This document shows positions 2,409-55,032 of a stretch of DNA of 64,000 bases, piece after piece (the first letter of the stretch is position 1; every line of letters begins with the position of its first letter). Source of the DNA: Podarcis erhardii (Eukaryota). The translations under genes and the position numbers were made by a program. The notes under the pieces are model-generated. The model made no database searches, was not told the DNA's origin, and saw only the letters and a program-made list of their open reading frames with translations. The DNA lies in the NCBI GenBank assembly GCA_964252035.1, contig OZ176205.1. One strand, 5' to 3'.

Positions 2409-2436
2409 CACACACACACACACACACACACACACA
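2409..2436. repeat. (CA)n microsatellite
   Basis: Direct reading. Confidence 0.95.
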
Positions 2437-3618
2437 ACCCTTGAAGTAGTTTACCCCTGTCTCCCTTTGTCTGGAAGATTGGCAATGGTCTAGTGGAGCT
2501 GACAATGTACTTTTAAATTAGGCATGGGCTAGTGATAATTGTTAATGATTGAATGTCAATGGACGGGGGAAGTAAAATCCATTGAGAAGCACATGGGTGC
2601 TATTTGCAAGTGCCACTTATGCTGACAAGAGATTTGGATTTTCACATACGAAAGGCGAATTAAATTATGCTAAGTATATGGTTATTTAATTACCGTGAAC
2701 TAAATATCGCATAACATGGGAGTAAATAAAGTTTGCTTTATTGTTTTCTGACTTTAGATAAAAATGTCATTTGCTTCCCCTCCATCAATATTAGTGCGAT
2801 CTAAACTGTGGTTTATGTTGACACTATTGTGTGTTTAATGAACTCCTATCAAATATGCATAGCAAATAAATGCTATGTTCCATGTAAACCCCATTACAAG
2901 CCCTTTCTCACTCACACATACGCACAGTTGCTTGCTGCTCGAGTATATTAAGCACTCTTCAAAATATACTTATATTTGGATCTTTAACGTCCATATCACT
3001 TTAACGTAACTAAATCTTGATCCATTCCCATATCTCCCACTGATGTGAAAGAGAAATCAATATGATTAGAAGTTCTGCTGCTGCGGTAATGGGCAGTGCT
3101 GCTGCTTTTAAAATTCAGCCTAGAACATCACCTGGACTTGTCTGCTGAGAAAGTAGGTTTGTGGCAGAACAGATTAGACCTCTCTAAAAATCCTTGTCTA
3201 ACTACCCAGGCAGAGCCACATGATGACATTGCTTCTGATGGAGCCAAGAGAAATCCAGGCTGGCAGAGGAACCAAACTGCCTCCTTACATTTGCATAACT
3301 AAAGGCATCTTACGGAGGAGAGAGATGCACAGGGCTACATATAAGGAGCATTCCAATTGTATCAAATCATCACCCTGTATCAAATCATCAGGGCTGTTGG
3401 TCTGTGTCAGATGATTGGCATTTGGACTCAGTCGTTGGGCCCAATTCACCACAGATGCTAGAGAGCGGGCATTTTTCAACATGACAGTGCAAATATTTAG
3501 AATGCTAGAATGGTAGAGACAGCCTCTGCTATTAAGGATCATTGTGTTTTCACAAGTAATACTGTAAAAAAATGTTTCCGTCTCTTAGGAATAGGTGAGA
3601 CAGAAAGTGGGAAAGAGG

Positions 3619-3720
3619 CAGGGCTTTTTTCCAGCCAGAACTCACCGGAACCAGCACCACATAAGTGGGCGCCATTGCCAATATAAGAGAACAAGGAAGT
3701 TCCGGCACCTCTTTTTTCTA
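3619..3720 (+). mobile_element. Truncated hAT-like MITE
   Basis: CAGGGCTTTTTTCC start, ..GTTCCGGCACCTCTTTTTTCTAG interior. Confidence 0.4.
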
Positions 3721-5745: not shown

Positions 5746-6094
5746 CAGTGGTGCCTCGCAAGACGAAATTAATCCGTTCCGTGAGGCTCTTCGTCTAGCG
5801 GTTTTTTCGTCTTGCGAAGCAAGCCCATTGACAGCTTAGCGGATTAGCGCTATTAGCGGTTTAGCGGCTTTTAGTGGATCAGCTGATAAGCGGCTTATCA
5901 GCTGATAAGCGGTTTAGGGCTTAGGAAAAGGGGGGGGGAAAGGAAAAAACCCCCGCAGGAACACGCAATACATTTTCGTCTTGCGAAGCAAGCCCATAGG
6001 GAAATTCGTTTTGCGAAGCGCCTCCAAAACGGAAAACCCTTTCGTCTAGCGGGTTTTCCATCTTGCGAGGCGTTCGTCTTGTGGGGCACCACTG
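5746..6094. mobile_element. Tc1/mariner (pogo/Tigger-like) MITE, 349 bp
   Basis: TIR CAGTGGTGCCTCGCAAGACGAA / TTCGTCTTGTGGGGCACCACTG, TA on both sides, CpG-rich. Confidence 0.9.
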
Positions 6095-9000
6095 TAATGT
6101 CAGTTTGCCTGGGTTATCTATGGGCCAGGTCAAAACTGCTTGGTTCTAGATAAAGGGCATTGCTAGGGGGGCTGTACAGAGAGGTCCATGATGGGTCAGG
6201 TGATAGCACTGTTCTAGCAACACTGTTGAGGACTGGTGTTTCAAAGACAAAATACCACAGCTGTCTTCTCCACCCAGTGGCAGCATTCACTTCTCAAAGA
6301 TGTTGTCCCAAACAATGTTTCACCCTCAGATTTTGGCAGAAAGAGATAGGCCAGATCACATGTACCGACACACAGTAATGTTTCATCAAAGCAGGGTCTT
6401 AAAGTTCTCTGTATCCAATCTCCAACAAGAAATAAATTCTGATGGAAGCTCCTGTGGGGATGAACCCTCTACCTTGTGGTTATGTTGGGTCAAAAGTTGA
6501 GATGAAAGCAACTATTTCTTAAACCACATTATTTCTTACTATGCATTTCTCTCCTAATCATCCAGCGCTCTTCAATATCTATCTATTTATCTATCTAGTT
6601 ACCTAGCAGAGATATATAGCCTGTCAATTGTACCTGCCTATGCTGCAATGCTGCATGCAAACTGTGGGAATCACAACCCTAGTTTTCTTGGTCTGTATTA
6701 TTACTTACTTTATGAGGCCTTCTCAACCGATAAATAGTTGCGACAGGATTCATAAATTCTGGGATGATGTGTAAGAGGGGGAGGGGAGGAGGGGGAGTAA
6801 ACAACACTCTTGCCACTTCGCCCCCACAACTGCATTTTGAATTTAAGGGGGGGGGGTATGGCTCTTTGACAGTGACCCATGTATCAGATGATTAGTGGAA
6901 ACTGACTGGAATGACAAATAATAGAAAGACTTGCTCTCTCAGACATCACATTAAGAGACTATTTGACTGGAGCTGTTTTAATGAATTAGACACTTTTCAC
7001 TCTAAATTAAACTAAAATGTGTAGAGAGAAGGAAACTATTTTTCTACTTAATGCAACATGGCTCAATTCCCTGGTTATACTTTTACATAAGCTATACAGT
7101 TTGATTCTTTGGCTATTTTCTTTTTCAACACATTTTGTGTTTTTCTGCGAGTACCTTGGATCCTGGCCTAATTGAATCCATTGAGGTTAGCACTGTTTTG
7201 CTTTAAAATAGAACATAGGGATTGACAACCTTTTTTTACTGTAATATTTTGTATGTTGTTAACAAGCTATTGCTGTGCATTGTTTCATATTGCTACTGTG
7301 TCATAGTCTTGCTCATTGCATATCATTATCTTATTTGAATATAATAAGTGCAGCATGCAGAATACTCACAAGAGAAAATTGGATGCCAATTACAAATATT
7401 TGACAGTGACCTGTATATCTGTAGTCCTGATGCATGAATGAAAGTTTATAGCATACAAACCTACAAAACAAACTTACCTGTCATCTCATTCCACAAAAGT
7501 TGCATAAAATGCTGCACTTTCAGATTATCAGTGAATATAACTTTATTTGCTTGTTTCTAAAAATAAAATTAAAAAATGTACAAATTTAAGTGTCCCCATC
7601 AGAAGTGACCTCTCGTTTTTTTACCAATAGGAAACTTAGTTCTAGAAGAAAAAGAGGGCTGTGATATGAACATTGTTCTAGCATGAAGAACTGAGAAATG
7701 GACAAATCTTGCTGAAGTCAAAGTTGCCTAGGAAAACCCTATTGCAGATATAAATATTATGCAGTTTGAAGCGACTAGATGCATGGAAACTGACTCCTTT
7801 TGGAAATAAAACATTGTCAAGCCCCGTAAGTTTAATTAAAGCTTTATTTGCAGAACTTTCTTGAAAACAAAATAAAAACATCAAAGATACATTCATATAT
7901 TTCCATAAGACATTTTGCTGCACATTGTGCACAGGCTCAGTATCTTAGAACATATGAAATACTCCAAACAGACCTATAAGCAAAGGTGTCTATCTCTCTA
8001 TAACCTCCATTAGTCTGGAGCTGTTTACCTGGAGAGTCATTTACATCCTTACTCTCACAGAACCTTGGAACAAAGATCTCCAGCCACCACCCTTCCAAGG
8101 TGGCAAATTCAATTCAATACCACTCATGTGATCTAAGGTTAAAAGACCATGCCATTTCTGAGAATAATAACAGTTGATTATCAACCCATCTATGAGCTTG
8201 AATCCAAAGGCACTTTAACATGCAGAGCAGCCCCTCTGAATTCTGTTGACATTCAGCTCATTCGACAGTCCTCCCATGCCTTATCCAACACCTTTCCAGA
8301 AGACCCCTTGACCCTCAGCAAGTTTTGTGGGGAGCAGGGGTCTGTCACAGGGAAGAGAAGCATGTGAAGTCCCAATTGCTTGAGCAGAGTAGCAGACTTC
8401 TGTTTGATCTTCTCTGCATCAACCCTAATGGTTTAATTAACATTTATTGACTTGGCAGTTGACAATATTTTAGACCTTTTTATATATCCCTATGATATAA
8501 TCTTCTGCATGGCTTGAACCATTGCTTCTGAAACAAAAAGCACTTCTTTTGGAACTGACTGCAGAATCTGAGGTTATGTGTCTGATAACAAATTACTGAA
8601 CAAAAAAATCCCTCAGTGTGGAAGCACAGTTAAAAGATTATTTATGTGAATAGCTATATTTTGTTTTTGAATGGGCATGATTTCTAAAGAAGCTTTTAGA
8701 TAGGTAATCTACCTGTGAGGACTTGCTAAGACAACTGGGGAAGGCATTCTTTAGACAATTATCAACACACTCCACTCATAATGGGCTAGTCAACCGGCAT
8801 TCAGCTGTGCCTAGATATAGTTTTCAAAGTTGGTCTTAAATAGGTGGGGCCATTCTTGTTTGGAAATTATTCATTCTGTTGGGATGTGCTTCCACAATTC
8901 AGCAGGGACACTGATCTCTGCATAAAACCAGAGAGTGTCCCCTTCAATTGTATGAAATGGCATTCTATTGATATTTTCATAATCTTCTTAGAATTGCTAT

Positions 9001-9832
9001 TTCTTTCATTTTGTAGATATGAAAAGACCGCAGGGCAATTTTACACCCATAAAATGAGAACGAATTAATCCCTGGCAACATAATATATTCTTAACCAGTT
9101 TTCCAGTGGCTGTGGAAGCCCACAAGTTATTCCTCAGAATTTTCAGCAAAGTGAGATGGCAGTAGCAGTGATTATTGGGATTATTGGCACAATGACACTT
9201 TGGACAGTAGTGTGGGGAAGCACATTGTCACAAAGCTGTTTAGAACTTTACTGCAAGTTTCCTTGGCATTTTTTACATATCAGAATCTGGAGAAGTTATG
9301 ATTCCAAAGTTCCATGTAAAAATTGAGTTCTACCACGTTCCTTCAGTCAGAGTTTGCTCTGAGAGCCGTGGAACATTAACAAGTCCCATCACCTCTAAAG
9401 GGACATGCTCTGCTATAGGCAAAGTTTGTAGCAGCAAGGAGCCTCACATGATAAGAACTCTTGGCTATGAGAGTCTGGACGACCTGTTTTTTTATCTTCT
9501 TAAAAGGTGGCGGGGGGGGGAGGAGGAACCTGTTACTGGGCAGTAGCAGTGCTACAGTCCCCAAACTGCCTTGTAAATATATTTATTTACCTTTCGTATT
9601 GCCAAGTGGATTTTTAAAAATCACCTTAATATCTGTATGGAAATGGGACAGGATAGATTTGGTCCTCTTCTCATGCAGAACTGGGATGGACTGGACTTTA
9701 ATAGGTCCATCTACCATTCCAAGTTATGATCTAGGTTTTACTCAGGACTCTCTCTATCTCTCAATCCCTTTGCCCACAAGCTAGCCCTGCTGAGACAACC
9801 ATAAAAGATTCTGGTAGGTCTCAATATACATA

Positions 9833-10040
9833 CAGTGGTACCTCGGGTTAAGAACTTAATTTGTTCTGGAGGTCCGTTCTTAACCTGAATCTGTTCTTAA
9901 CCTGAGGTACCACTTTAGCTAATGGGGCCTCCTGCTGCCGCCGCGCCGCTGCCATGCGATTTCTGTTCTCATCCTGAAGTAAAGTTCATAACCCGAGGAA
10001 CTATTTCTGGGTCAGTGGAGTCTGTAACCTGAAGCGTCTG
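9833..10040 (+). mobile_element. CAGTGGTACCTCGGGTT-family MITE, right end truncated
   Basis: TA-CAGTGGTACCTCGGGTTAAG start; interior matches the six other copies. Confidence 0.85.
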
Positions 10041-12923
10041 TTTACAGGTCTGCTAACTTCCCTCGGACTTCCTCATTATTGGTTTGGTGACCTTACAAGC
10101 TCCTGCAGTTTCAAAGGTGGCGTCTGAATTGGTGAGCTGACTGCCACTCTTCGTTTTGAGAAATGTTTTAAATTAAAATGGTGGTAGTGGAGTTGCAGCC
10201 CTCACTGCTGTTTCAACACTTCTGTTCCTAGTTCACTGGCCAAGCAGGCAATTGTGTCTGCTCCTTCCCTCCAGCTTGTTGCAGAAGGAAAGAAATATCA
10301 CTGCAGTGGCAGGCAAGTGAGAGAAGGGCAGTGGCTACAGGTGGAAGAGGATCAGCCCTGCTGAACGGAAAGGGTTGACAAATTGGGGCAGTGGTGGCAT
10401 CAGGGTATTGGGGGGTGCACCTCACCTAGGGGAGTCCCTCAAGTCTCACTTGTGGGCAGCCCTCAAACCTGGTAGCACCTCTGTTTGGGAATTTAAATGT
10501 AAAGAAAAAACATGTCAAAAACATTTGAAATATCAGCTGTTATTAGATGCTGTTGCTCAGCAATTTAAAGAATGAAGCCTATCTTTCATATCTAAAAGCT
10601 TGTTTTTCTACTTTTGCAATTTATTGAAGGAAAAGCGAGAATATCTTTTTTCTAAAAACCATCAGTTTAATGGATATAGAGTGTTTCCTGAATTATAAAA
10701 GCATAATTGGTTGTGTTTGTAACCTCTTTTCCCCTCATTTGCATTGAAAAGGTATAAAATCTTGTACATTCTTTTGTTATGTAAGATTTCTGCTTCGGCA
10801 CTTTTCTTCCTTTCTATTTACTTTTATTTATTATAATTACTTAAAAAAAATAACTATGCCTTTGTGAAGGAGTAAATGGAATGAACAGACCATTATACTA
10901 TGTCTAATAAAGCTTTACATCTTTCCTGGCAAAAAGGAGAAAAGAGGTTTATGCAAAGTTATGTGTTGACAACACTTTTGTCAAGCCATAAATGATATGT
11001 ACGGAAAGCTGGGCTACTTCTATACCTGTAACAGCTTAGCGAGAGGTCCTAGCAAATTTCTTTAGGTTGCCTTCTCTGCATCTTGAGCAACTCATTACAT
11101 CTAGCTAAAGTGCCAAATTCTGTAATTATTGCAGGTCCACCCATAGAAGATATTTAATGTTAACTTCACACACACAGTGGGAATATTGTTGATAGGTGTG
11201 AAATTATGACATTCAATAGAACTTGTGACGGCACAAGCTGTGTAAGGATGAGAGGGCGTTTGCACCAGTCCCACCTGCAATTTCCCTGTGCATGTTGGCC
11301 TCCCCCTTAGCCCAACCTTTCATGCATTGAGCATGAAGGTGTGCAGAGCGGTTTTAATGATGTTAGCTGAACAAGGTTAGAATTCTCCACAGAACTCAAC
11401 ACATGGTTTCTGATTGAAGGGAAGATTCTAATCACTTTCAGGTGAGTACACTGAGAATCCTCCACACAACAGGAATACCCACCCTCCTATGCAATTGGGG
11501 TTCATGGTCAAAGGGAAGGTTCTAGCTACGATCAGCTGATGGTTAGAACATGGTCAAAAATCTTCATTCATGTGTTAAAGGCCAGAAGAGGTGGAAAGGT
11601 GGTACACACACAGCCACTCCAGGAATGGCATAGATGGGCATGCAATTTGCAAAACAATATTGTGCCACACAGAGTGGGGAAATATTTTGGCGCAATGGCA
11701 CTGTGTCACCTGTGCTCATCCAAAAACTCCATGGATATACATGGTGTCAATTCAGACTGATTTCCTTATCTTTTCGTTCAGGAGTTTACCCATTTTTAGG
11801 GGGCATCAGGGCTCAGGAAACACCTGAAATGAAACAGGTTTAAAATGTAGGGGGTGGATGGGGAGAAAGGAAAAGAATTTTTTTTAAAAAGCTAACACCA
11901 TCATTTTAAATATGCTCCCCGAAAAACAACTTCAGGGGGGCCCATTTTCAAAGGGCACCAAAACAGCCACCCCCCAAAAAATTCAGCACCTGCAAATGGG
12001 GCAGTGAAGGGAGTGTGTTTTGATCCACCCCTATCAAACAGACTGTTTTTTATATGCTCACTTATCTGGCAATAGACCACTGTGAGATCCCTTGTTCCTT
12101 TCCAAGTCTATCTCTTCCCAATAAACTCACTGCACTATCAGGTCTGCATAAAGAAATCTAAGAAACAAATGAGTTCATGGACAGTTTAAGTCTGATCTTT
12201 CCTGAAAACTAAAGGTGTCAGAATTTAGCTAACCACATACAGAAGAAAATATGAATGAAAATTCAAGTCACAACGAAACAACAATACCTTCAAGCTATGC
12301 CACAGTTCCCAGTTCCCATAATTTACTTTGTAAAAAGTTACATTTGGGCAGTATGGTGTTTCTCTGTGATTATAACAAATTTGCTTTCATCTCCCGTGCC
12401 ACTGCGCCTGTTGTTTCCTTTATCTCTCACACTAAAACATTGCAAAAATAATCTGAATGTTTAATGTAGACTTGCAAAGTAGCATGTAACTAATAATTCA
12501 ACTGTATCAAACAGAACATTTTTAAAACAACTGTGAGGAGCTGACATTTTGCTATGCTCGGTTATCCCACAAGAAATGGAAGACATTGTAGAGTAGTCAT
12601 ATTTGTTGCAGCTACAGAATAAAAAAAAAGTATTTCGTTCCCTCCAAGAGTAACCCATATGTTATGGGGATGAGGTCCTACTTTCTCAAATGCATGAAGT
12701 AATCACTTAAGCGGGCAGTATCAACCATGAAACCTTGCCCCCCCCCCCACCCAAAAGAAGACTTAGAACTGGAATAAGGTGTATATTTATTAACAGGTAA
12801 GAAGTTGGAGGGACTGCAAACACAATGTCCATAACAGGCTGCATTGGAGCAATCCTAACCTTCAATCGCCACTTCTGGTCAGGATTAGGCAGAGGTGTCG
12901 CTCTACTGGCAGAGGAGGACTCT

Positions 12924-13078
12924 CATACCTTCCAACAGTTTTCTGATGAAAATAGGGACATCCTATGCATACCCTCCAACATTTCTCCAATGCAAACAGG
13001 GACATCCTAAAGAAAAGTGGGACATTTCAGGGCCAATCCAGGGACTGCCCCTGGAAAACAGGGACACTTGGAGGGTCT
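12924..13078 (+). mobile_element. CATACCCTCCAACATTTCTC-family repeat (DNA-transposon-like) with duplicated 41-nt terminus
   Basis: The terminal unit occurs twice in tandem; related copies at 18584-18720, 41705-42020 and 63713-63752. Confidence 0.65.
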
Positions 13079-13429
13079 GGACTCTGTCACAGCAGAAGCC
13101 CTATGAAAGTTCAGGCAGCTGCTGCCACTGGTATTCCTACTGGCAGTAGTCTGCCTAAGCATCATAAAATGGAGTGTTATGGGGGAAGTGTGCATGCACA
13201 CAAAAGCTCATACCAATAACTAACTTAGTTGGTCCTACTGGAAAGGTGCTACAGGAAGGAATTTTTTAAAAATTATTTTATTTTGTTAAGAAAACAGAGA
13301 TTGGGTTTCTACCTTCACGTGCTCTGATGTGATTAACTGCACTGTACCAGGATTCAGGGTAAATTCATCTGAAGTGCTGTTTGATGCTTTTAAAACTCCC
13401 ATTCTCCCTCTCTCCACCTCCACCTCCTC

Positions 13430-43671: not shown

Positions 43672-44224
43672 CCATCTGCACAATATATGTAAACTAGTAC
43701 AGTGGTACCTCGGGTTACAGACGCTTCAGTTTACAGACTCTTCAGGTTACAGACTCCACTAACCCAGAAATAGTACCTTGGGTTAAGAACTTTGCTTCAG
43801 GATGAGAACAGAAATTGCGCAGCAGCGGTGCGGCAGCAGCGGGAGGCCCCATTAGCTAAAGTGGTACCTCAGGTTAAGAACAGTTTCAGGTTAAGAACGG
43901 ACCTCCAGAACGAATTAAGTTCTTAACCCGAGGTACCACTGTATCATGTCTTTAAACAGTCATGGCTTCCCCCAAAGAATCATAGGAAGTGTAGTTGTGC
44001 TAAGAGTTGTTAGGAGACCCCTATTTCCGTCACAGAGCTACATTTCCCAGAATTCCCTGGGAAGGGGGATGGATCATTAAACCACTCTGAAAATAATAGT
44101 TCTGTGAGGAGGTTTCCTAACAACTCTCAGCCCCCTTCACAAACTACAGTTTCCAGGATTCTTTGGGATGAGCCATGACCACTTAGTGGTATAATGATGC
44201 TTTAAATGTACTGTGCAGATGAGG
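43672..44224. mobile_element. Long imperfect inverted-repeat (foldback) element
   Basis: Termini CATCTGCAC/GTGCAGATG; inner arms CATGGCT..CAAAGAAT..TAAGAGTTGTTAGGA mirrored at right. Relatives at about 54745-55010 and 58795-59005. Confidence 0.7.
43700..43941 (-). mobile_element. CAGTGGTACCTCGGGTT-family MITE nested in an inverted-repeat element
   Basis: TIRs and TA flanks; interrupts the left arm of 43672-44224. Confidence 0.9.
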
Positions 44225-45419: not shown

Positions 45420-46173
45420 TGTCAGAGCCACCCGAGGTCCCAGCTCACAAGAGACCAAAGTCCAGTCCAAGTTATGTACAAAAGGATTTATTGAAGATCA
45501 TTGTAGCCATTACATCCCAACTCCGTGGCTCCGCATCTGTTACCCTTAGATGTTAGAAGTCCCCTCTGAGTCCGTCCCTCCCCTGCACCAATTTAAGAGG
45601 CTTGTACTGCTCCACCTTTTCCTCTCTTTCCTTTTCCGCAGGGTCTTCCTGCCCCCCTGTCTTCCCTCTTTCCGGGACTCCCCAGAGGCTGAGTCTTCTC
45701 CCGCCTGCTCCCCCCTCCTTCGTGCTTTGGCACCAGGCTCCTCCTCAGAGCTCTCCTCATTTCCGCGCGCCTCTATATTTGAACTTGGCGCGCGTACGTT
45801 GCCTCTGACCTTCCTTTCTACAGTTACGCTGCTCTCGGTACTACACTCCTCCCTTTCAGGCAGGACGTCTTGCTCCGAACTCCTCCCCCTTCCTCCTTCC
45901 TGTCCTGCTCTTTCTGACACACTGGCAACTCCCCCCCCTCCACTCCTTTCCGACGGGGGAGCTGGTCCCGCTTTGCCACTCCCACTGAGGATTCCCTCTT
46001 CGTTCCCCTCTTTCTGACTGCTTCCCTCTATATTGCCCCTTGGCCTGACCAGGGGGGCTCCCTTCTGGGAATCCTCTGATTCGCTAGACGGACTTTGGGA
46101 CAACCTCGGCTCGTTGTCGTCCTCTTCCTCCTCGCCCTCGCTCTCTGTCTCCTCTCTCCCTAAAACCCTGACA
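45420..46173 (-). repeat. 3' LTR (754 bp), U3 read through by pol
   Basis: Preceded on the element strand by a polypurine tract. AATAAA at 45492-45487 (minus). The pol stop TAA at 45548-45546 lies inside it. Confidence 0.97.
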
Positions 46174-49100
46174 TCCATCCCCCCCTCGAAGCCCCCCCTT
46201 CCCCCCTTCCGCTCATCGGGTGCAGGTTGTGGAAGCTGCCGCTCTTCGGAGGCGGACGCAGGATACAGATTCTGCACCTCCATCTCCTCTGTTTGCAGTT
46301 CGTTGTACGAGTGTTCGAATTCGGGTTCTTGACCCAAGGTGTTCTCTTCTCCCTCCTCCATTGGTACCTGGTCCGGTGCTGCCTGCCAAGGTCCCGTCAG
46401 CCATTTCCTGCGCCAGTCCTCCTCTGGTTGCTCGTCCCACCAATAAGAGGGTTCTGTGTCCACCCCCGAACACGATCCCCTGGGCGAGTTGGAGTCCGGC
46501 GACCTTTCTTCGGCTGAAGAAAAGCCGTGGAAAGTGCTGCCTGAACATGTGGGCGTAAAGAGCCAGTCATCAAAGTACTCGGCTGGCATGGGTCTATGAG
46601 GGAAAAGGGCATGGAACTCGTCTTTTAAAAGAGGTTCGTCTAAGGCGTAGCCCGGCACCCAACCATTGGCACTGACTGGGGCACCCTCTCTGACTAGAAA
46701 ATATTCTACTCCCTCTTGCCCCCATCTCGAGTCCAGGATCTCTGTGACCTCGTTGAGTGGTTCGGCCCTAGGCGCCCTCTCCCTCTCCTGTGACTTAGTG
46801 TGTTGTTGCGTGACTGTGTCAGACTCCTGAAACCTGTGCGGTGCCTTGTAGGGAGTGAGCACCGATCTATGAAAGACCGGGTGCACTCTGGAACCTTCGG
46901 GGAGGGCTAGTCGAAAGGCTACAGGGTTGATTTTAGCCTCCACCTGGTACGGCCCTAACTGCCTGTGCCCCAGCTTCTTCTTGGCCAACGACTTGGCTGG
47001 CATCGCTTGGGCCGCTAACCACACCCAGTCCCCCACCTGGATCTCCTCTCCCTCTCTCCTGTTTTTGTCAGCCTGCACCTTATATGCTTGCTTGGCCAGC
47101 TCTAAATGTCTCCGCAACTCTTCGTGCACCTCCTGCAGCTCCGCTGCAAACTGGTCGGCTCCTTGCGGCACCCCCTCTCCCGGTGCCACGAACCCCGGGA
47201 AGGTTCTGGGATGACGACCATTGTTCGCGAAAAACGGCGTCACCCCCGTGGACGCGTGCTTCGTGTTGTTATAGGCAAACTCTGCCATCGGCAGGTAGTC
47301 CACCCAAACTGCTGGTCGCTGGTTGGCGTAACATCTCAGGTACTGCTGCATGATCGCGTTGACCCTCTCAGCTTGGCCGTTGGTTTGTGGGTGTCTCGCC
47401 GACGTGAGGTTGATCTTGACGTTCAGGATACCTAAAAGCTTCTGCCAAAAATTGGAAACAAACTGGCGCCCCCTGTCGGACAGGATGGACTGCGGCAGCC
47501 CATGCACCTTGAACACGTGATCGATGAAGAGTTTGGCAGTCTGTTCCGCCGTCGCCACCTTTGCGCATGGAATGAAGTGCGCCATCTTGGTGAACAGGTC
47601 CACAACCACCAGTACCGCCGTCTTCCCCCTGGAGCTGGGCAGGTCAGTAACGAAGTCCAGAGCTACCCTCTCCCACGGTTGCTGTGGCGTTTCCAGCGGT
47701 TCCAACAGCCCCGCTGGCTTCTGGTGTACTGGCTTGAACCTCTGACAAGTGTCACACCTGGCGACGTAATCCGCTACCTCTCCACGCATCCGGGGCCACC
47801 AAAAGTCTCTTGCCACCAGTTCTATTGTCTTCTCCTTACCGAAGTGGCCCGCACTGGGGGCGTCGTGCAACTGCTGCAGAACCTTTGCGCGAAGCTCGTC
47901 GCTTGGCACGTAGAGGGCACCTTTGCGAGTTAGCAGCCCGTCGCGTAGTTGGAACTCTTCGCCACTCTGCACACCTCTGCGCAATTCCTCCATCTTGGAC
48001 TGTGCGAACTGATCCACTTGCAACGCGCGTCGCACCGCGTCCAGATCTACTGTGGCGGCAGCGCACGACCACGCCTGCGGTGCGAAAATGTGCTTGGCTG
48101 CTACAGGCGCCGCTTCATCGAGATATTGCGGTTTCCTGGATAGCGCATCGGCTATAACGTTGGAATCTCCTGGGACGTACTCTATCTGAAAGTCGAAATC
48201 CGCGAAGAATTCCGCCCAGCGCATGTGCCTCTGGCTTTGGAGCTTCGCCGTGCGCCAATACTCTAGGTTCTTGTGATCCGTGCGGACCTGTACTGTGTGC
48301 TTGGCTCCTATGAGGAAGTGTCGCCACGCTTTGAAAGCTGCGTGAATGGCTAACAGCTCCCTGTCCCATATGGTGTAGTTTTGCTCCGCTTTGCTGAGCT
48401 TTCTGGAGTAAAAGGCACCGGGTCTCCAGTTGCCATGTGGATCTTCTTGCAGGAGTACGGCTCCAACTGCTCTGTCTGACGCGTCGGTCTCTACTCGCAT
48501 GGGCTTGCCTGGATTCACGTGCAGCAGCTGCTCCTCGGAGGCGAAAAGGCTTTTAAGCTTCCGAAAAGAGCGCTCTGCCTGTTCCGTCCACACGAACCTC
48601 TTCTTCTTGGAACTCAGAGTGTCCGTGATCGCTGCCGTCTCCTTTGCAAAACCTCTGATGAATTTGCGGTAGAAGTTGGCGAAGCCGATGAATCTCTGGA
48701 CTTCCTTCCGATTGCGGGGGCTCTTCCAGTCCAACACCGCGCGGACCTTGGCGCTGTCCATGGCCAGCCCCTTGTCGGACAGCTTGTAGCCTAGGAAATC
48801 CACCTCCGTCACATCAAACTGGCACTTCTCTAACTTGGCGTAGAGCCTGTTCTCCCGTAGTCTTTGCAGGACTTCCTTTACGTCCTTCTCATGGGCCTCC
48901 TCCGTTTCCGAAAAGATCAGGATGTCGTCGAGGAAACACACGCATTTCTTGTAGAGAAGTCCCGCTAGCACGTGATGCATAAAGGCTTGGAAGACGTGAG
49001 ATCCATTTTGGAGACCAAATGGCATAACTCTGTATTCATACGTGCCCAGAGGCGTGAACATGGCCGTCTTCCACTCATCGCCCTCCCGGATGCGTATGAG

Positions 49101-50057
49101 GTTATACGCTCCACGCAGATCCAACTTGGTGAAGATCTTCCCCTTCCTTACGGTTGCCAGGAGATCATCTATCTTGGGCATGGGGAAGGCCTTGGGCTTG
49201 GTCATACTGTTTATGGACCTATAGTCCACAATAAGTCTTTTTTGGGGCGTGTCCTTTTTCTTTACAAAGAAAACAGGACTGCCCCCCACCGCTTTCGATT
49301 CCCGGATGAATCCGCGCTGCAAATTGTGCTCTATGAACTCCCTGAGCTCTTGCATCTCGTCCTCAGACATGGAATACAGCTTTGCAGTCGGCAACTGCGC
49401 CCCTGGCACCAGGTCGATGGCACAATCATAGGGTCTGTGGGGCGGCAACTGGTCAGCTTCCTTCTCGCAGAAAACCTCCAGGAACCCTTCGTACTTGCTA
49501 GGTACTGCCTGCACCATGCCCAGTCGCAGCTGCTGCTCAGCCCCCTCCTCCTGGCACGACTGGATGCAGTTTTGAGCACAGTACGATGAGCAAAAGGTGA
49601 TCTGGCGTTGGTACCACGCTACAGCAGGACTGTGTCTCTCCAGCCAACTCATGCCCAATACTATAGGCGTGTCAGACAGGTGGGTGACATTGAAGCTAAT
49701 GACTTCCCGGTGATCTCCAATCCGCATCACCATGGGAGGCGTCTGATGCACCACTTGCCCTCCAAGCAATTTCCTGCCATCCACCGTGACTACGTTCAGA
49801 GGTGTTGTGGCTGGCAGAAGCGCTATGCGATGCTGCTTGACAAATTGCATCCCCACGAAATCGGCGTTGCTCCCGGAATCGATCGTGAGGGGCACTTCTA
49901 TGGGGGTCCCATCTGGCAACTGCAGTGTTGCGGTGAGCTGCACTGCTGGCTTGGGTGGTAAAGGGTCTGTAGGTTGCAAAAATGCTGAGGACTGTTCTAC
50001 AGATCCGCCTGGCTGAGCCCCAGCATTTGTGCTTCCAGCCAGGCATTGCCGTTTCCC
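45546..50057 (-). CDS. pol: Pol polyprotein (protease, RT, RNase H, integrase, chromodomain, long acidic C-terminal tail), expressed by -1 frameshift
   Basis: No internal stops in the ORF track (45546-50174). Motifs: IDSGS protease, KLDLRGAY and FLDD RT, ETDAS RNase H, H-x6-H..C-x2-C zinc finger, LDF/SDRG/QAER DDE, GPY, and chromodomain EVTEILDSR...W.P. Confidence 0.96.
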   Translation of the reverse strand, partial: GKRQCLAGSTNAGAQPGGSVEQSSAFLQPTDPLPPKPAVQLTATLQLPDGTPIEVPLTIDSGSNADFVGMQFVKQHRIALLPATTPLNVVTVDGRKLLGGQVVHQTPPMVMRIGDHREVISFNVTHLSDTPIVLGMSWLERHSPAVAWYQRQITFCSSYCAQNCIQSCQEEGAEQQLRLGMVQAVPSKYEGFLEVFCEKEADQLPPHRPYDCAIDLVPGAQLPTAKLYSMSEDEMQELREFIEHNLQRGFIRESKAVGGSPVFFVKKKDTPQKRLIVDYRSINSMTKPKAFPMPKIDDLLATVRKGKIFTKLDLRGAYNLIRIREGDEWKTAMFTPLGTYEYRVMPFGLQNGSHVFQAFMHHVLAGLLYKKCVCFLDDILIFSETEEAHEKDVKEVLQRLRENRLYAKLEKCQFDVTEVDFLGYKLSDKGLAMDSAKVRAVLDWKSPRNRKEVQRFIGFANFYRKFIRGFAKETAAITDTLSSKKKRFVWTEQAERSFRKLKSLFASEEQLLHVNPGKPMRVETDASDRAVGAVLLQEDPHGNWRPGAFYSRKLSKAEQNYTIWDRELLAIHAAFKAWRHFLIGAKHTVQVRTDHKNLEYWRTAKLQSQRHMRWAEFFADFDFQIEYVPGDSNVIADALSRKPQYLDEAAPVAAKHIFAPQAWSCAAATVDLDAVRRALQVDQFAQSKMEELRRGVQSGEEFQLRDGLLTRKGALYVPSDELRAKVLQQLHDAPSAGHFGKEKTIELVARDFWWPRMRGEVADYVARCDTCQRFKPVHQKPAGLLEPLETPQQPWERVALDFVTDLPSSRGKTAVLVVVDLFTKMAHFIPCAKVATAEQTAKLFIDHVFKVHGLPQSILSDRGRQFVSNFWQKLLGILNVKINLTSARHPQTNGQAERVNAIMQQYLRCYANQRPAVWVDYLPMAEFAYNNTKHASTGVTPFFANNGRHPRTFPGFVAPGEGVPQGADQFAAELQEVHEELRRHLELAKQAYKVQADKNRREGEEIQVGDWVWLAAQAMPAKSLAKKKLGHRQLGPYQVEAKINPVAFRLALPEGSRVHPVFHRSVLTPYKAPHRFQESDTVTQQHTKSQERERAPRAEPLNEVTEILDSRWGQEGVEYFLVREGAPVSANGWVPGYALDEPLLKDEFHALFPHRPMPAEYFDDWLFTPTCSGSTFHGFSSAEERSPDSNSPRGSCSGVDTEPSYWWDEQPEEDWRRKWLTGPWQAAPDQVPMEEGEENTLGQEPEFEHSYNELQTEEMEVQNLYPASASEERQLPQPAPDERKGGRGGFEGGMDVRVLGREETESEGEEEEDDNEPRLSQSPSSESEDSQKGAPLVRPRGNIEGSSQKEGNEEGILSGSGKAGPAPPSERSGGGGVASVSERAGQEGGRGRSSEQDVLPEREECSTESSVTVERKVRGNVRAPSSNIEARGNEESSEEEPGAKARRRGEQAGEDSASGESRKEGRQGGRKTLRKRKERKRWSSTSLLNWCRGGTDSEGTSNI
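46174..46187 (-). promoter_or_regulatory. Polypurine tract
   Basis: GAGGGGGGGATGGA immediately precedes TGTCAG of the 3' LTR on the element strand, with further G/A tracts upstream. Confidence 0.85.
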
Positions 50058-50815
50058 TGAGGCTCCTCTTCTTGGGTCACTTCTGCTGCTACCGTTGCTA
50101 AAGCTGCAGTGTGCTTCTGGAGCCTCTGGGGACACTCTTTCGCCATGTGCAGTGCACTGTCGCAGATGTAACACTTCCTGGTCCCTCTAGGAGGCTTCGC
50201 CTTCACTGCACCGGAAGCCGGGGCTCTGGCTGTTGCTTGAGCCTTAGCACCACCAAGTTCCATCGGCTCCTCCCCCTGCCTGCCCAGCGGCGAGGGATGT
50301 GACTGACTGAACTCCCTGGGGATGAAAGAAGACGTCCTCGCTGGTGGACGCACCTGCCGTTCTTCCTCATTGTGCCAAAGACGCCCCTCGTGCCTTATCC
50401 CAATCGATAAAGCCCTCTGCACAAGTTCCTCCAGGGTCTGAGGTCTGTCTCCCCTGGCAAGTTCATTCTTAATGGGACCGCTGAGACCCTCCCAGAACAA
50501 ATCCCTCACTTTCTCCTCCTCATCTTTAAAGTCATGACGAAGCAAGTGCAATGCATACAAAACGTCTGCTTTGAAACTGGGATAATGCTTCAGGTTCCCA
50601 TCGAAGTGGGTGACTAGGCTGCCCCCCCTCCTTCCAAGTCCAATTCCCTCTGATCTGGACCCTGGGAACCCTTCCCTGCTTGCACGCTCCCACCTTGTTT
50701 GCAGGTCTTGGCAGCGCTTCTCCATTTCGTCATGCTTCTTCTGAGACGCAAGGACTGCAGCTGTGAGTTCGGACACTGTATTCCGCAGCGCTGTCAGCTG
50801 ATCCTCCGCACTCAT
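49997..50815 (-). CDS. gag: Gag (coiled-coil N-terminus, partial capsid, CCHC zinc knuckle); probably internally deleted
   Basis: ATG at 50815 in a GCC-ATG context (the track starts at an upstream TTG). Contains FDGN..F motif, FWEGLS, PMELG and zinc knuckle CYICDSALHMAKEC, all typical of sushi/PEG10-like Gag. Confidence 0.92.
   Translation of the reverse strand: MSAEDQLTALRNTVSELTAAVLASQKKHDEMEKRCQDLQTRWERASREGFPGSRSEGIGLGRRGGSLVTHFDGNLKHYPSFKADVLYALHLLRHDFKDEEEKVRDLFWEGLSGPIKNELARGDRPQTLEELVQRALSIGIRHEGRLWHNEEERQVRPPARTSSFIPREFSQSHPSPLGRQGEEPMELGGAKAQATARAPASGAVKAKPPRGTRKCYICDSALHMAKECPQRLQKHTAALATVAAEVTQEEEPQGNGNAWLEAQMLGLSQADL
50007..50057 (-). promoter_or_regulatory. Programmed -1 ribosomal frameshift signal (G GGA AAC plus downstream stem-loop)
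   Basis: Slippery heptamer at 50057-50051 in gag phase, with pol in the -1 frame. A 9-bp perfect stem GCCTGGCTG (50044-50036) / CAGCCAGGC (50015-50007) begins 6 nt downstream. Confidence 0.88.
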
Positions 50816-50867
50816 GGCCGTTACCGTTTGTGAGCTTTGCAAAAAAAAAAAAAATTTGCGTTCTGTG

Positions 50868-50879
50868 GAGGGGACTTTC
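50868..50879 (-). promoter_or_regulatory. Primer-binding site, self-priming type
   Basis: Element strand reads LTR..CA|GA AAGTCCCCTC with no TGG tRNA-type start. It is complementary to GAGGGGACTT in the LTR (51026-51017). Confidence 0.8.
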
Positions 50880-51634
50880 TGTCAGAGCCACCCGAGGTCC
50901 CAGCTCACAAGAGACCAAAGTCCAGTCCAAGTTATGTACAAAAGGATTTATTGAAGATCATTGTAGCCATTACATCCCAACTCCGTGGCTCCGCATCTGT
51001 TACCCTTAGATGTTAGAAGTCCCCTCTGAGTCCGTCCCTCCCCTGCACCAATTTAAGAGGCTTGTACTGCTCCACCTTTTCCTCTCTTTCCTTTTCCGCA
51101 GGGTCTTCCTGCCCCCCTGTCTTCCCTCTTTCCGGGACTCCCCAGAGGCTGAGTCTTCTCCCGCCTGCTCCCCCCTCCTTCGTGCTTTGGCACCAGGCTC
51201 CTCCTCAGAGCTCTCCTCATTTCCGCGCGCCTCTATATTTGAACTTGGCGCGCGTACGTTGCCTCTGACCTTCCTTTCTACAGTTACGCTGCTCTCGGTA
51301 CTACACTCCTCCCTTTCAGGCAGGACGTCTTGCTCCGAACTCCTCCCCCTTCCTCCTTCCTGTCCTGCTCTTTCTGACACACTGGCAACTCCCCCCCCCT
51401 CCACTCCTTTCCGACGGGGGAGCTGGTCCCGCTTTGCCACTCCCACTGGGGATTCCCTCTTCGTTCCCCTCTTTCTGACTGCTTCCCTCTCTATTGCCCC
51501 TTGGCCTGACCAGGGGGGCTCCCTTCTGGGAATCCTCTGATTCGCTAGACGGACTTTGGGACAACCTCGGCTCGTTGTCGTCCTCTTCCTCCTCGCCCTC
51601 GCTCTCTGTCTCCTCTCTCCCTAAAACCCTGACA
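50880..51634 (-). repeat. 5' LTR (755 bp)
   Basis: TG...CA ends with 6-bp inverted repeat, adjacent to the PBS and gag start. Differs from the 3' LTR by one extra C in a C-run near 51391-51399 and substitutions at 51449 and 51491. Confidence 0.97.
50947..51056 (-). promoter_or_regulatory. LTR core promoter/R region: TATA-like TTAAAT, predicted TSS about 51026, AATAAA
   Basis: TTAAAT at 51056-51051 lies 25-30 nt upstream of the self-priming sequence. AATAAA at 50952-50947. Confidence 0.6.
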
Positions 51635-52143: not shown

Positions 52144-52743
52144 TAAATGAAATACAACAAAAACAATGAAAAAGTGGGTAAATGTGGCACCAGCTATCAA
52201 CCAGCATGCCATCATAACAGATCAATCTTATGTTGAGTGTGTACATAGCTCTAGGGAGAGAATTCCAAAGATACGGGGCCAACAGTGAAAAGGCTATGTG
52301 TGAGGGTAAAAAATTAGCTGGGGAATAAAGTTTCATCACCTTTTACACCCCTGCTGTGTGAATGTGTGTGCATGTTTTTGAAGATCATGAAAGTCACACA
52401 TTTACATGGTCTCCCCTTGCACCTCACAGGTCGGTTTCCACTTTGTTTTCTTAGTCCTAACTATAGTTCATGGTGTTTTCCAAGCTATTCCCCCTCCAAA
52501 TGGCTTTGCTTCCAATTCTCCAAGCCATGCTTTGGAGTGTTGTCTGAATTGTGCCAGTGTCTGAGTTGGCAAATACAACATGCTCAGCAAGAAGAATATA
52601 GACACCTCTTTTATCTACAGATGTTTAGAGATATGACACAGGTTTGAAAGTGAGGAGTGCCTTACATAGCAGAGGCTGAGATGTGCAGTAGCGTGAGGAG
52701 AAGAAAAGGGTTTCAAGAAAACAGGAAAAGTCAGAAAATGCAT

Positions 52744-53180
52744 TGTAATGGGGTTGGGGGTTGCTTGTGCGTAAGGCGCAAACTGCTCCAAGCTGAGTAG
52801 TTTGGTTAAAACTTTCCCCTGGCTGGACAGTCAGTACTCCGTGACTGTCTCAAACACTGGCAGAATCCGTCAGTGGGCGTTTCCTGAATTTCCTCCAACA
52901 TAAAAGTTCTTTGACACCAAGTCGTCGCCTAGCTTCCCTGCGCGGAAGCTTTCTGCGCAGAGTGGGCGTCCCAAGGGGAGGTCCTGTGCTCTCCCCGCTG
53001 GTCTCGCTGGAACAGTCCCAGAGCCTTTCCTCCGAAGCTCCCTCAGCCCCCTCTTTCTCCCTGGCATCACGTCTATTTCCTTCCCCAGCGGAAGCTCTCC
53101 CTCTCTCCTTGCTGGTTCCCTCTCCAGCATCATTGGGGAGCCTTACCACCACCCTTGGCTCCGATGGCAGTTCCCTGACA
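52744..53180 (-). mobile_element. Solo LTR of a related but divergent Gypsy family (437 bp)
   Basis: TG...CA ends, with the element strand starting TGTCAGGG as in the full element. Near-perfect 5-bp TSD TGCAT (52739-52743) / TGCAC (53181-53185). Purine-rich U3. Confidence 0.85.
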
Positions 53181-53290
53181 TGCACAATATCATTTAGATA
53201 AATATCTGGATAGAGAAGTTACGGAGCCATTAGGCCCCCAGACCTGAGGTTCTCCACTCCTGGTTTAATTCTGTCTTATATTCATTTTCA

Positions 53291-53981
53291 GAGGGGCAGA
53301 TAGGGCTCATCAACCTGGGAAGGTAGCCCATCTAGGAGAAGAAAAACTCTGATCCTAAACCTCTGCTGCCTTGTAGGATATCTTCAGGAGAAGAAAAGGC
53401 TAAGGAGTAAACCCCACACAAATCTGGAGTAGAGTTTCTAAGATGGTTGGATGACACCTTGTACTCATCCCGTCAACGTCTGTAACCAAGCTGTTCCCAG
53501 ATGTATTGCTCTGCTTTCCCTTGGACCACATCAGTGAGGCTGAGAGCAGGGACATAGAAAGGGGGGTGCAGTGGAGGCGACCAGCCCCAGGTGTCATCTC
53601 AGAGAGGGGTGACCAAATCTCCACTGCACGGATTGCCACAGTGCCGTGATCAGCCTGGGCGGATTGCGCCGCCGACATGTGAATGGCCCCTGGGATGGAT
53701 TGTGCAGCCACGCCGATCGCCCACGTGAGTGGATTACCCTGCCCCTTGGCAGATTGCCCAACCCCCATGGTGCATGGCATGTGCACCACTCCGGGTGCCC
53801 GAGCGGCTAGCTCTGCCACTGGCTGAGAGGGGGTCTTATTATCTGGGCAGCCTCGGACCTCCAGACACACTGCCCAAGCTTGCTCCCTGAGGAGCTCATT
53901 TCAGTGTTGCTAATGCAGCGGTTTGACTTCACCCCTGGAGGCACACTCCATTGTCTCTCAAAACAGATGGATGCCAAGAAC
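53291..53981. mobile_element. Interspersed repeat, probably non-LTR-retrotransposon-derived (RTE/Vingi-like), host of the hAT insertion
   Basis: Recognised from memory of a lizard repeat consensus in which the two flanks are contiguous once the insertion and one TSD copy are removed. Family assignment uncertain. Confidence 0.45.
53547..53821. mobile_element. hAT-type non-autonomous element nested in another repeat
   Basis: Exact 8-bp TSD GCTGAGAG (53539-53546, 53822-53829); imperfect CAG-G-CA-AG termini; GC-rich interior. Confidence 0.75.
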
Positions 53982-54744: not shown

Positions 54745-55010
54745 CACTCACGCAATACATTGAAAGCGCTATGGTACCACATTAACAGTCATGGCTTACC
54801 CCAGAAAATTCTGGGAGCTGTCATTTGCTAACAGTACTGAAAGTTGCTAGGAGGTCCCTGTTCCCCTCACAGAGCTATGGTTCCCAGAGTGGTTTAACAA
54901 CAAATTTCTCTTCCTCAGGGAGTTTGGGAATTCTAGCTCTGTGAGGGGAATAGGGGGCCTCCTAACAACTCTCAGTCCTCATAACCAACAACAGCTCCCA
55001 GAATTCTCTG
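54745..55010. mobile_element. Foldback family copy, right side broken next to a Sauria SINE
   Basis: ACAGTCATGGCTT..AGTTGCTAGGAG..CACAGAGCTA matches 43672-44224. Confidence 0.65.
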
Positions 55011-55032
55011 GGAATTCTGTTGACTGGTTATA

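What the first reader, a model, noticed from the sequence alone, without database searches (positions are those of the whole stretch)
52850..53180. Divergent solo LTR preserves a same-phase U3 reading frame with synonymous divergence: evidence for a conserved LTR-encoded protein module
Seen: the solo LTR is open on the element strand from its first base (x-AT GTC AGG, the same phase as GAT GTC AGG = DVR in pol) for 110 codons. It ends TLRRKLPRREARRRLGVKELLCWRKFRKRPLTDSASV*, while the full element ends TLRKRKERKRWSSTSLLNWCRGGTDSEGTSNI*. Of the nine shared residues (TLR, LL-W, TDS), five differ only at the third codon position: ACC/ACT, CGG/CGC, CTC/CTT, GAC/GAT, TCA/TCT. Both spacing differences are 4-codon, frame-preserving indels. 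The two U3s otherwise differ greatly in length and sequence. Inference: purifying selection acts on a peptide encoded in U3 (acidic linker plus basic, NLS-like LLxW motif) across at least two Gypsy families. Established analogies are HIV nef and MMTV sag in U3, but those are separate ORFs rather than fusions to integrase. Caveats: the alignment was made by eye, the strand is T-poor so open frames arise easily (an 87-codon ORF exists in another frame), and LLxW overlaps the TATA-like box.
Basis: partly seen in the sequence, partly recalled or inferred. Interest (0 to 1): 0.8.

Follow-up and report, generated by a model that had tools for sequence, protein, structure and literature searches.

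The report
LTR-encoded integrase tail, fossil copy
The open frame in this solo LTR is a young, untranslated relic of a real feature of two lizard Gypsy families, in which pol reads on through the promoter part of the 3' LTR to give integrase a selected C-terminal tail; plant centromeric retrotransposons are known to do this, and I found no account of it in vertebrates.

Summary
The solo LTR (52744-53180, minus strand) is open for 109 codons in the same phase as pol of the neighbouring intact Gypsy element.

- **Family of the solo LTR.** Its only look-alike among 1.84 billion proteins is an integrase-chromodomain fragment. That ORF crosses the polypurine tract, enters a homologous LTR in the same phase and stops at the same codon (56% aa identity). 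dN/dS is 0.37, against 0.5-1.15 in the other five frames. Over the last 49 codons it is 0.14.
- **Family of the full element.** Against a Podarcis muralis copy, the 198 LTR-encoded codons give dN/dS 0.21, with differences of 57/68/110 by codon position.
- **Shared motif between families.** It is not significant (P 0.04-0.2). It also overlaps the TATA-like box and a Tf1-like self-primer.
It is circular.
- **The solo LTR itself.** It is not under selection. It is a recent insertion, absent from three related species.

An earlier agent of this scan reported the same layout on other DNA of this genome. Tail function (nuclear import or chromatin targeting) is inferred, not shown.

The parts
52744..53180 (-). 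Solo LTR (437 bp, TG...CA), called family B here
   Evidence: No PPT upstream and no PBS downstream. Contigs of three other species show an empty site that skips exactly 442 bp (437 + 5).
53181..53185 (-). Target-site duplication, upstream copy (GTGCA)
   Evidence: The joint has 5 letters that fit both sides.
52739..52743 (-). Target-site duplication, downstream copy (ATGCA, 4/5 match)
52850..53179 (-). Relic of the LTR-encoded pol tail: 109 codons in pol phase plus the TGA stop. Not translated here, because no pol lies upstream.
   Evidence: Homologous to the C-terminus of P0006 (E 4.5e-19, 56% identity). dN/dS 0.37.
52853..52999 (-). Conserved C-terminal block (49 codons): SGES...basic run...LLCW...TDSASV
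   Evidence: Gap-free against L001. dN/dS 0.14, against 0.31-2.4 in the other five frames. Neutral simulation P<0.0002.
52900..52905 (-). A/T box TTTTAT (TATA-like), inside the LL-C-W codons, 53 nt before the stop
   Evidence: Its promoter role is inferred.
45420..51634 (-). Full-length Gypsy element (family A): perfect 5-bp duplication ACATG; LTRs differ by 2 substitutions and 1 indel
   Evidence: Pfam finds PR, RT, RNase H, integrase zinc finger, integrase core and SH3_Tf2-1.
45420..46173 (-). 3' LTR of the full element (754 bp)
50880..51634 (-). 5' LTR of the full element (755 bp, one extra G in a G run)
45546..50174 (-). pol ORF (1542 aa) that runs through the PPT and 208 codons into the 3' LTR
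45549..46172 (-). LTR-encoded integrase tail of family A (208 codons): an acidic, Ser/Gly-rich stretch, then a basic end with RWS..LLNWC
   Evidence: Against P. muralis L002: dN/dS 0.21, differences 57/68/110 by codon position, simulation P<0.0003. At least 10 P. muralis proteins keep the same end.
46174..46216 (-). Polypurine tract region, translated in frame as a Gly/Glu-rich stretch (...GGRGGFEGGMD)
45591..45596 (-). A/T box TTAAAT, inside the LL-N-W codons, 48 nt before the stop
45557..45566 (-). Self-primer GAGGGGACTT (inferred start of R), inside the last codons of pol (DSEGTS). The same sequence is at 51017-51026 in the 5' LTR.
   Evidence: Complementary to the PBS. The homologous site in L002 pairs with a changed PBS.
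50858..50879 (-). Primer binding site of the self-priming type (no tRNA 3' end match seen by eye)
49997..50842 (-). gag ORF (281 aa, weak CCHC knuckle). It overlaps pol in another frame.

Best explanation
In at least two related lizard Gypsy families with Tf1/sushi-like features, the pol ORF does not stop before the polypurine tract.

**How the tail is made.**
- On the genomic RNA, translation runs on through the PPT, which reads as a Gly/Glu-rich stretch.
- It crosses the LTR boundary in a fixed phase (GAT GTC AGG = DVR) and covers all of U3.
- It stops about 50 nt after the TATA-like box. In family A that is about 18 nt inside R.
- Integrase therefore carries, after its SH3 and chromodomain(-like) parts, a tail encoded by the LTR: 109 aa in the solo LTR's family and 208 aa in the full element's family.

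**What the tail looks like.**
- It has a variable acidic, Ser/Gly-rich stretch followed by a conserved basic end containing Trp.
- Its amino-acid sequence is under purifying selection, so U3 serves as promoter and as coding sequence at once.

**What the solo LTR is.** It is the remnant of one recent insertion of such an element. Its frame is open because it is young. Nothing lies upstream to translate it.

**Inferred, not shown.** The basic end acts as a nuclear-import or chromatin/DNA-tethering module of integrase, like the C-terminal tails of other integrases. The acidic part is a flexible linker.
For: **Family B (the solo LTR's family).**
- The solo peptide has a single hit among 1.84 billion representatives: P0006, E 4.5e-19. 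Query residues 1-108 match its last 101 residues.
- P0006 has an SH3_Tf2-1 domain and a Pfam Chromo domain (E 3.4e-11).
- It reads ...GGEGGPGEEVDVRELPSE... and ends ...LLCWKRFKRRPLSDSASD*.
- Its DNA (L001) aligns with the solo LTR from the TGTCAGGG start. There is one 21-bp indel, and the stop is at the same codon. The first indel not divisible by 3 comes 8 nt after the stop.
- dN/dS is 0.37 in the pol frame, against 0.5-1.15 in the other five frames. Neutral simulation gives P 0.002.
- The last 49 codons give 0.14, with 23.5 synonymous and 19.5 nonsynonymous differences (P<0.0002).

**Family A (the full element's family).**
- Many P. muralis proteins keep the whole tail and the same end.
- Against L002, the 198 aligned LTR codons give dN/dS 0.21. 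That equals the pre-LTR linker (0.22).
- Differences by codon position are 57/68/110. There are no stops, where neutral simulation gives P(no stop) 0.009.
- In the nucleotide alignment, gaps in the coding part are 15, 12, 3 and 2+19 nt. After the stop they are 1 and 2 nt.

**Age of the solo LTR.** An empty site skipping 442 bp is present in three other species, whose flanks differ by 1.3-2.9%.

**End of the ORF in family A.** The PBS pairs with LTR nt 608-617, 30 nt after the A/T box. The pairing covaries in L002.
Against: - Family B rests on a single pol-bearing contig. It is a short Logan assembly of unknown species, and a chimera cannot be fully excluded.
- The 24 best-supported variants among family B copies show no codon-position bias: 7/10/7 by position, 8 synonymous, 15 nonsynonymous, 1 apparent stop.
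- The middle of the family B tail evolves neutrally (dN/dS about 1).
- The strand is T-poor, so open frames are easy to get: 41% of shuffles give one in some frame.
- No RNA, ribosome or protein data were examined, so translation of the tail is inferred.
- The AlphaFold model was uninformative (pLDDT 40).
- Nothing tested here bears on what the tail does.
Confidence: 0.85

Rival explanations
1. Composition artefact. The element strand is purine-rich and T-poor, so stop codons are rare. The in-phase open frame of the solo LTR is then chance, and nothing in U3 is coding.
For: - An ORF of 109 codons or more in some frame occurs in 41% of dinucleotide shuffles.
- Three of the six frames of the solo LTR are open for 87-111 codons.
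- Antisense ORFs of 155-318 aa cross the family A LTRs.
- Variants among family copies show no codon bias.
Against: - The exact phase from base 1 occurs in only 2% of shuffles.
- A 67%-identical relative keeps the same frame and the same stop, joined to integrase.
- dN/dS is lowest in this frame among six, in two families.
- The antisense frame with low dN/dS is the one that shares wobble positions with the pol frame. It carries stops.
Confidence: 0.04
2. What the two families share (basic run, LLxW, TDS, same phase) comes from shared cis-acting DNA/RNA signals and common descent of the layout, not from a conserved peptide module. The signals are the LTR end TGTCAGGG, the TATA-like box and the transcription start or self-primer. 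Each family's tail is selected, but on its own sequence.
For: - The cross-family peptide similarity is not significant: hhalign E 0.097; HMM against shuffles P 0.08 and 0.2; Smith-Waterman P 0.04-0.06.
- The LLxW codons are the A/T box itself: CTC TTA AAT TGG, CTT TTA TGT TGG, ATA TTA AGT TGG.
- In family A the DS(E/D)G(T/A)S codons are the self-primer, and they change together with the PBS.
- A 16-nt stretch coding RKRWS is identical at DNA level between family A subfamilies.
Against: - Every aligner's best local alignment puts the basic run and LLxW in register without gaps.
- Both tails share the same overall build.
- An earlier agent of this scan reported a shared basic motif in other families of this genome. 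I did not check that.
Confidence: 0.55
3. The U3 frame is a separate accessory gene, like nef or sag, expressed from its own messenger rather than as a tail of integrase.
For: The ORF list shows a GTG 5 nt upstream of the solo LTR.
Against: - In both families the frame is continuous with integrase, with no stop between them.
- The linker before the LTR has the same dN/dS as the LTR part (0.22 against 0.21).
- That GTG lies in flanking host DNA.
Confidence: 0.03
4. The solo LTR's ORF has been taken over by the host and is kept open by selection at this locus.
For: None beyond the open frame itself.
Against: - The insertion is absent at the orthologous site in three related species.
- No pol or promoter lies upstream.
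- The last codon differs from nearly all other copies (place 52854).
Confidence: 0.01

Closest known systems
Plant CRM-clade chromoviruses, group A (centromeric retrotransposons) and Beta vulgaris Beetle/Bingo elements
   Same: [quoted passage not shown] Sources: PMC3059260, Figure 4 legend; PMC3605345.
   Different: - In the plants, the chromodomain-position module itself lies downstream of the PPT.
- Here, the chromodomain (family B) or a degenerate version of it (family A) lies upstream of the PPT. The LTR encodes an extra, mostly low-complexity tail of 109-208 aa that covers the whole of U3.
- No sequence similarity to the CR motif was tested or is claimed.
- The hosts are lizards, not plants.
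Tf1/sushi group of Ty3/Gypsy elements (self-priming chromoviruses of fungi and vertebrates)
   Same: - An SH3_Tf2-1 domain and a chromodomain at the integrase C-terminus.
- The PBS is complementary to the inferred 5' end of R rather than to a tRNA, with covariation between subfamilies.
   Different: From my own knowledge, not checked in a paper here: Tf1's ORF ends before the PPT. I found no description of an LTR-encoded tail for this group in the library searched.
C-terminal integrase tails that carry import or targeting signals (Ty1 nuclear-localisation and Pol III-binding tail, Ty5 targeting domain, MLV BET-binding tail)
   Same: A short basic or aromatic module at the far C-terminus of integrase, after a flexible stretch. 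This is the model for the function I infer. It rests on my own knowledge and was not tested.
   Different: Those tails are not encoded by U3. No sequence relation was shown here.
Retroviral genes that overlap U3 (HIV nef, MMTV sag)
   Same: Coding sequence and U3 promoter share the same DNA.
   Different: Those are separate ORFs made from their own messengers. Here the frame is a direct continuation of pol.

Membership tests
Ty3/Gypsy LTR retrotransposon (full element 45420-51634) | Domain order PR-RT-RNase H-IN, flanked by LTRs with a target-site duplication | tested here: met
   Pfam finds RVP_2, RVT_1, RT_RNaseH, Integrase_H2C2, rve and SH3_Tf2-1 in that order. The LTRs are 754/755 bp and the duplication ACATG is perfect.
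Chromovirus (chromodomain-bearing Gypsy) | Chromodomain at the integrase C-terminus | tested here: inconclusive
   The family B relative P0006 has a Pfam Chromo hit at E 3.4e-11, above the cut-off. The window's family A pol has no Chromo hit even at E<=1, although the segment aligns with P0006 at 47% identity.
Tf1/sushi group | Self-priming: the PBS is complementary to the first bases of the transcript (R) | tested here: met
   A 10-nt match in the window (shuffle P 0.03) and an 11-nt match in L002 (P 0.0055), at homologous LTR positions 608 and 611, 30 nt after the A/T box, with three compensated changes. The transcription start itself was not mapped. Family B could not be tested because no PBS is available.
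Elements with an LTR-encoded integrase C-terminus (layout of plant CRM group A) | The pol ORF crosses the PPT and ends inside the 3' LTR | tested here: met
   Family A. Family B.
Elements with an LTR-encoded integrase C-terminus (layout of plant CRM group A) | The LTR-encoded part is selected as protein | tested here: met
   dN/dS is 0.21 (family A) and 0.37, or 0.14 for the C-terminal block (family B). It is lowest among the six frames.
Plant CRM clade | CR motif sequence and CRM-clade RT phylogeny | not tested
   No comparison with CR motif sequences or RT trees was made. The host and the upstream chromodomain make membership unlikely. Only the layout is alike.
Solo LTR | A single LTR flanked by a target-site duplication, with no internal sequence, and an empty site known | tested here: met
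   TG...CA ends, a 4/5 duplication, no PPT or PBS beside it. An empty allele skipping 442 bp occurs in three species.

The most novel reading that the evidence does not exclude
In lizard Tf1/sushi-like Gypsy elements, all of U3 and the first bases of R do three jobs at once: promoter, self-primer and coding sequence for an integrase tail. On this reading, the basic Trp-containing end of that tail is an integration-targeting or chromatin-tethering module. It would be a vertebrate counterpart of the plant CR motif, shaping where these young, still intact-looking elements land.
Probability: 0.25. Interest if true: 0.7.

Novelty: new variant of a known kind. Interest (0 to 1): 0.5.

Why it matters
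**For annotation.** It would show that a vertebrate LTR promoter can also be protein-coding along its whole length. LTR 'non-coding' sequence in these families then evolves under codon constraint, so LTR-based dating and neutral-rate estimates would be biased. Solo LTRs carrying such frames should not be called genes.

**For biology.** It offers a candidate integrase targeting or import module in an apparently recently active reptile retroelement. It also parallels plant centromeric retrotransposons, where the LTR-encoded integrase end is thought to direct insertion.

**A limit on significance.** An earlier agent of this scan already reported the layout on other DNA of this genome, so this window adds an independent confirmation rather than a first sighting.

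Tried and rejected
- **Direct comparison of the two LTRs.** Neither DNA nor peptide comparison was significant.
- **Profile comparisons of the two tails.** hhalign gave E 0.097. A family A HMM against shuffled family B ends gave P 0.08-0.5. I therefore do not claim a shared motif.
- **Other copies in the window.** There are none of either LTR.
- **Word-index protein searches.** Searches with the P0006 tail and with the solo peptide found nothing new.
- **DNA for P0001.** It is not on record. I reached family A DNA through P0007 instead.
- **Variants among family B contigs.** There is no codon periodicity. This is uninformative rather than contrary: only 24 of 109 variants were listed, copies decay neutrally after insertion, and linkage is unknown. 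The apparent W-to-stop change at 53018 may pair with the change at 53020 to give Arg.
- **AlphaFold2 on the family A C-terminus (alignment A4).** Mean pLDDT was 40, and even the chromodomain-like part did not fold. It says nothing about disorder. The only feature is a weak helix over STSLLNWC.
- **Rfam and tRNA scans around the elements.** Nothing was found.
- **Literature.** I found no vertebrate description in the held library. That library lacks most subscription journals, so the blank is weak.
- **RNA evidence.** Not examined. The one run search and the one read-laying run went to DNA.

Full report
**Anatomy**

Everything described here lies on the minus strand.

- **Full element.** A full-length Gypsy element occupies 45420-51634. 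It has a perfect 5-bp target-site duplication (ACATG). Its LTRs are 754 and 755 bp and differ by two substitutions and one G-run indel.
- **Its genes.** Pfam finds protease, RT, RNase H, integrase zinc finger, integrase core and a Tf2-1-type SH3 domain in the 1542-aa pol ORF at 45546-50174. gag is at 49997-50842.
- **Read-through.** The pol ORF does not end before the polypurine tract. It reads ...GGRGGFEGGMDVR..., crosses the LTR start (TGTCAGGG) and runs 208 codons into the 3' LTR.
- **Solo LTR.** About 1.1 kb away lies an unrelated-looking 437-bp LTR at 52744-53180. It has TG...CA ends and starts with the same TGTCAGGG. Its flanks are GTGCA/ATGCA, and there is no PPT or PBS beside it.

**The observation**

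The solo LTR is open for 109 codons in the same phase as pol of the neighbour, and both peptide ends read as quoted.
- Taken alone this is weak. An open frame of that length in some frame appears in 41% of dinucleotide shuffles. In that exact phase from base 1 it appears in 2%.
- Two other frames of the solo LTR are open for 87 and 96 codons.
- The two LTRs are not significantly similar as DNA (P 0.2). As peptides they are only marginally similar (P 0.06, or 0.04 for the ends).
Residues chosen because they are identical can only differ synonymously.

**The decisive check for the solo LTR's family**

- I searched the 109-aa peptide against 1.84 billion representative proteins. There was one hit: P0006, 474 aa, E 4.5e-19, 56% identity. 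The query's residues 1-108 match its last 101 residues.
- P0006 is the C-terminal part of a Gypsy integrase, with an SH3_Tf2-1 domain and a Pfam Chromo domain (E 3.4e-11). It is 47% identical to the window's pol over that part.
- After an acidic linker it reads ...GGEGGPGEEVDVRELPSE... and ends ...RRRLGVKQLLCWKRFKRRPLSDSASD*.
- Its DNA is a 1528-bp Logan contig, L001. It aligns with the solo LTR from the TGTCAGGG start at 67% identity. There is a single 21-bp indel, and the stop is at the same codon. The first indel not divisible by three falls 8 nt after the stop.
- So a pol-bearing relative of this LTR family reads into the LTR in this phase.

**Selection in family B**

| Region (solo LTR against L001) | dN/dS in pol frame | Other frames | Neutral simulation |
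|---|---|---|---|
| All 102 aligned codons | 0.37 | 1.15, 0.68 (sense); 0.79, 0.53, 1.05 (antisense) | mean 0.79, P 0.002 |
| First 24 codons | 0.46 | n/a | n/a |
| Codons 32-60 | about 1.07 | n/a | n/a |
| Last 49 codons (gap-free) | 0.14 | 0.31 to 2.4 | P<0.0002 |

- These figures are Nei-Gojobori estimates.
- The signal is uneven along the tail.
- The last 49 codons carry 23.5 synonymous and 19.5 nonsynonymous differences.
- The antisense frame with the next-lowest value is the one that shares wobble positions with the pol frame. I read it as a shadow of the pol frame.

**Selection in family A**

- The pol tail finds Podarcis muralis proteins at about 51% identity that stay colinear to the very end.
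- At least ten independent P. muralis entries end ...RRKRWS.AR(I/V)LSWCT.GGDSDGASP..
- Through a truncated NCBI model (P0007) I obtained P. muralis DNA, L002. It carries an integrase-to-LTR ORF at 4990-6159.
- Against the window, the 198 aligned LTR-encoded codons give dN/dS 0.21. The other sense frames give 1.71 and 0.77. Differences by codon position are 57/68/110, and no stops occur. Neutral simulation gives P<0.0003 for the ratio and P(no stop) 0.009.
- The linker before the LTR gives 0.22, so selection does not change at the LTR border.
- In a plain nucleotide alignment, the gaps in the coding part are 15, 12, 3 and 2+19 nt. After the stop they are 1 and 2 nt.

**The solo LTR is young**

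- Contigs of four species were laid on 52500-53400.
- Three of them (organisms G, A and D) have a contig that joins 52737 to 53180, skipping 442 bp. That is the LTR plus one duplication copy, with five letters fitting both sides. Their flanks differ by 1.3-2.9%.
- In the fourth run (organism F) the contigs match the flanks without a difference and break at the LTR borders.
- The insertion is therefore recent, and its open frame is inherited rather than kept by selection at this locus.
- The family has thousands of contigs at 80% likeness or more in all four species. The stretch 52841-52902, which holds the end of the ORF and its stop, is about ten times deeper than the rest.
- The 24 variants listed show no codon bias. 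I take that as uninformative, for the reasons given under what was tried.

**Is there a module shared by both families?**

- **What is shared.** The layout is shared: the phase at the LTR border, the PPT read as Gly/Glu, an acidic Ser/Gly-rich stretch followed by a basic end (net charge +8 and +11 over the last 37-38 residues), and a stop 48-53 nt after an A/T box. Since the integrases are homologous, common descent of the layout is the simplest reading.
- **What is not shown.** Sequence similarity of the tails is not significant. hhalign gives E 0.097. An HMM of five family A ends scores the family B ends at P 0.08 and 0.2 against shuffles.
- **Overlap with cis signals.**
  - The LLxW codons are the A/T box itself: CTC TTA AAT TGG, CTT TTA TGT TGG, and in P. 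muralis ATA TTA AGT TGG.
  - In family A, the 22 nt after the 5' LTR are complementary to LTR nt 608-617, 30 nt after that box.
  - In L002 a different PBS pairs with the homologous position 611 through three compensated changes. Shuffle P is 0.03 and 0.0055.
  - This is the Tf1-type self-priming arrangement. It puts the inferred start of R inside the codons for DSEGTS (window) and DSDGAS (L002).
- **Conclusion.** Part of what the two ends share may be promoter and primer sequence read in a shared phase.

**Mechanism**

*Shown:*
- ORF continuity from integrase into the LTR in two families.
- Frame-specific purifying selection on the LTR-encoded residues.
- The solo LTR's recent origin.
- PBS complementarity to the LTR in family A.

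*Inferred:*
- The tail is translated.
- The A/T box is the TATA box, and the self-primer marks the start of R.
- The acidic part is a flexible linker.
- The basic Trp-containing end serves nuclear import or tethering of integrase to chromatin or DNA. I put this function at roughly one in three. It rests only on analogy with other integrase tails.

**Comparison with what is known**

- The same is reported for Beetle and some Bingo chromoviruses of beet (PMC3605345).
- The lizard case differs in three ways. The chromodomain lies upstream of the PPT. The LTR adds an extra low-complexity tail across the whole of U3. The ORF ends inside the self-primer.
- I found no vertebrate description in the library available, which is a weak negative.
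- Two earlier notes of this scan on other DNA of the same genome describe the same layout. One was followed up by another agent with the same conclusion. I used that note as a lead to the plant papers and tested the claim independently here.

**Verdict**

- The core idea, a selected U3-encoded peptide fused to integrase, is supported in each family.
- A conserved cross-family motif is not shown.
- The solo LTR itself is an ordinary young relic.
- This is a new variant of a known kind, of moderate interest.

The full element is described as found.

Noticed in passing
window 50858-50879 with 45557-45566 / 51017-51026; L002 13009-13030 with LTR nt 611: The family A element has no tRNA-type primer site. 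The bases after the 5' LTR pair with the LTR about 30 nt after the A/T box. The pairing covaries in a P. muralis copy, as in Tf1-like self-priming.
   Followed up: partly
window 45550-46017 (+), 51010-51540 (+); L002 5034-5990 (-): Long antisense ORFs (155-318 aa) run across the family A LTRs. The frame shares wobble positions with pol (dN/dS 0.39, carries stops), so I read it as a shadow of the pol frame on a strand poor in A.
   Followed up: partly
window 53290-53400: A very high-copy repeat next to the solo LTR: more than 128 contigs in each of four species, with many joints. No tRNA or Rfam match.
   Followed up: no
window 50880-51634 against 45420-46173: The only indel between the two LTRs (an extra G in a G run, about LTR nt 236) sits in the 5' copy, which is not translated. 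In the 3' copy it would shift the pol tail's frame. This is a single event and carries no weight.
   Followed up: no
window 50845-50858: A run of 14 T directly after the primer binding site, before gag.
   Followed up: no
window 44107-44168 and 54952-55013: A 62-nt direct repeat (79% alike) on either side of the two insertions. It is probably part of another dispersed repeat.
   Followed up: no
L002 4200-4958 (-) inside the element at 1595-6285 (+): In P. muralis, a second LTR of the same subfamily (98% alike) is inserted in reverse inside the integrase region of a family A copy. A further copy lies tail-to-tail at 7225-13349.
   Followed up: no
window 52854: The solo LTR's last codon (GTT, Val) differs from nearly all other copies in four species and from P0006 (GAT/GAC, Asp).
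   Followed up: partly
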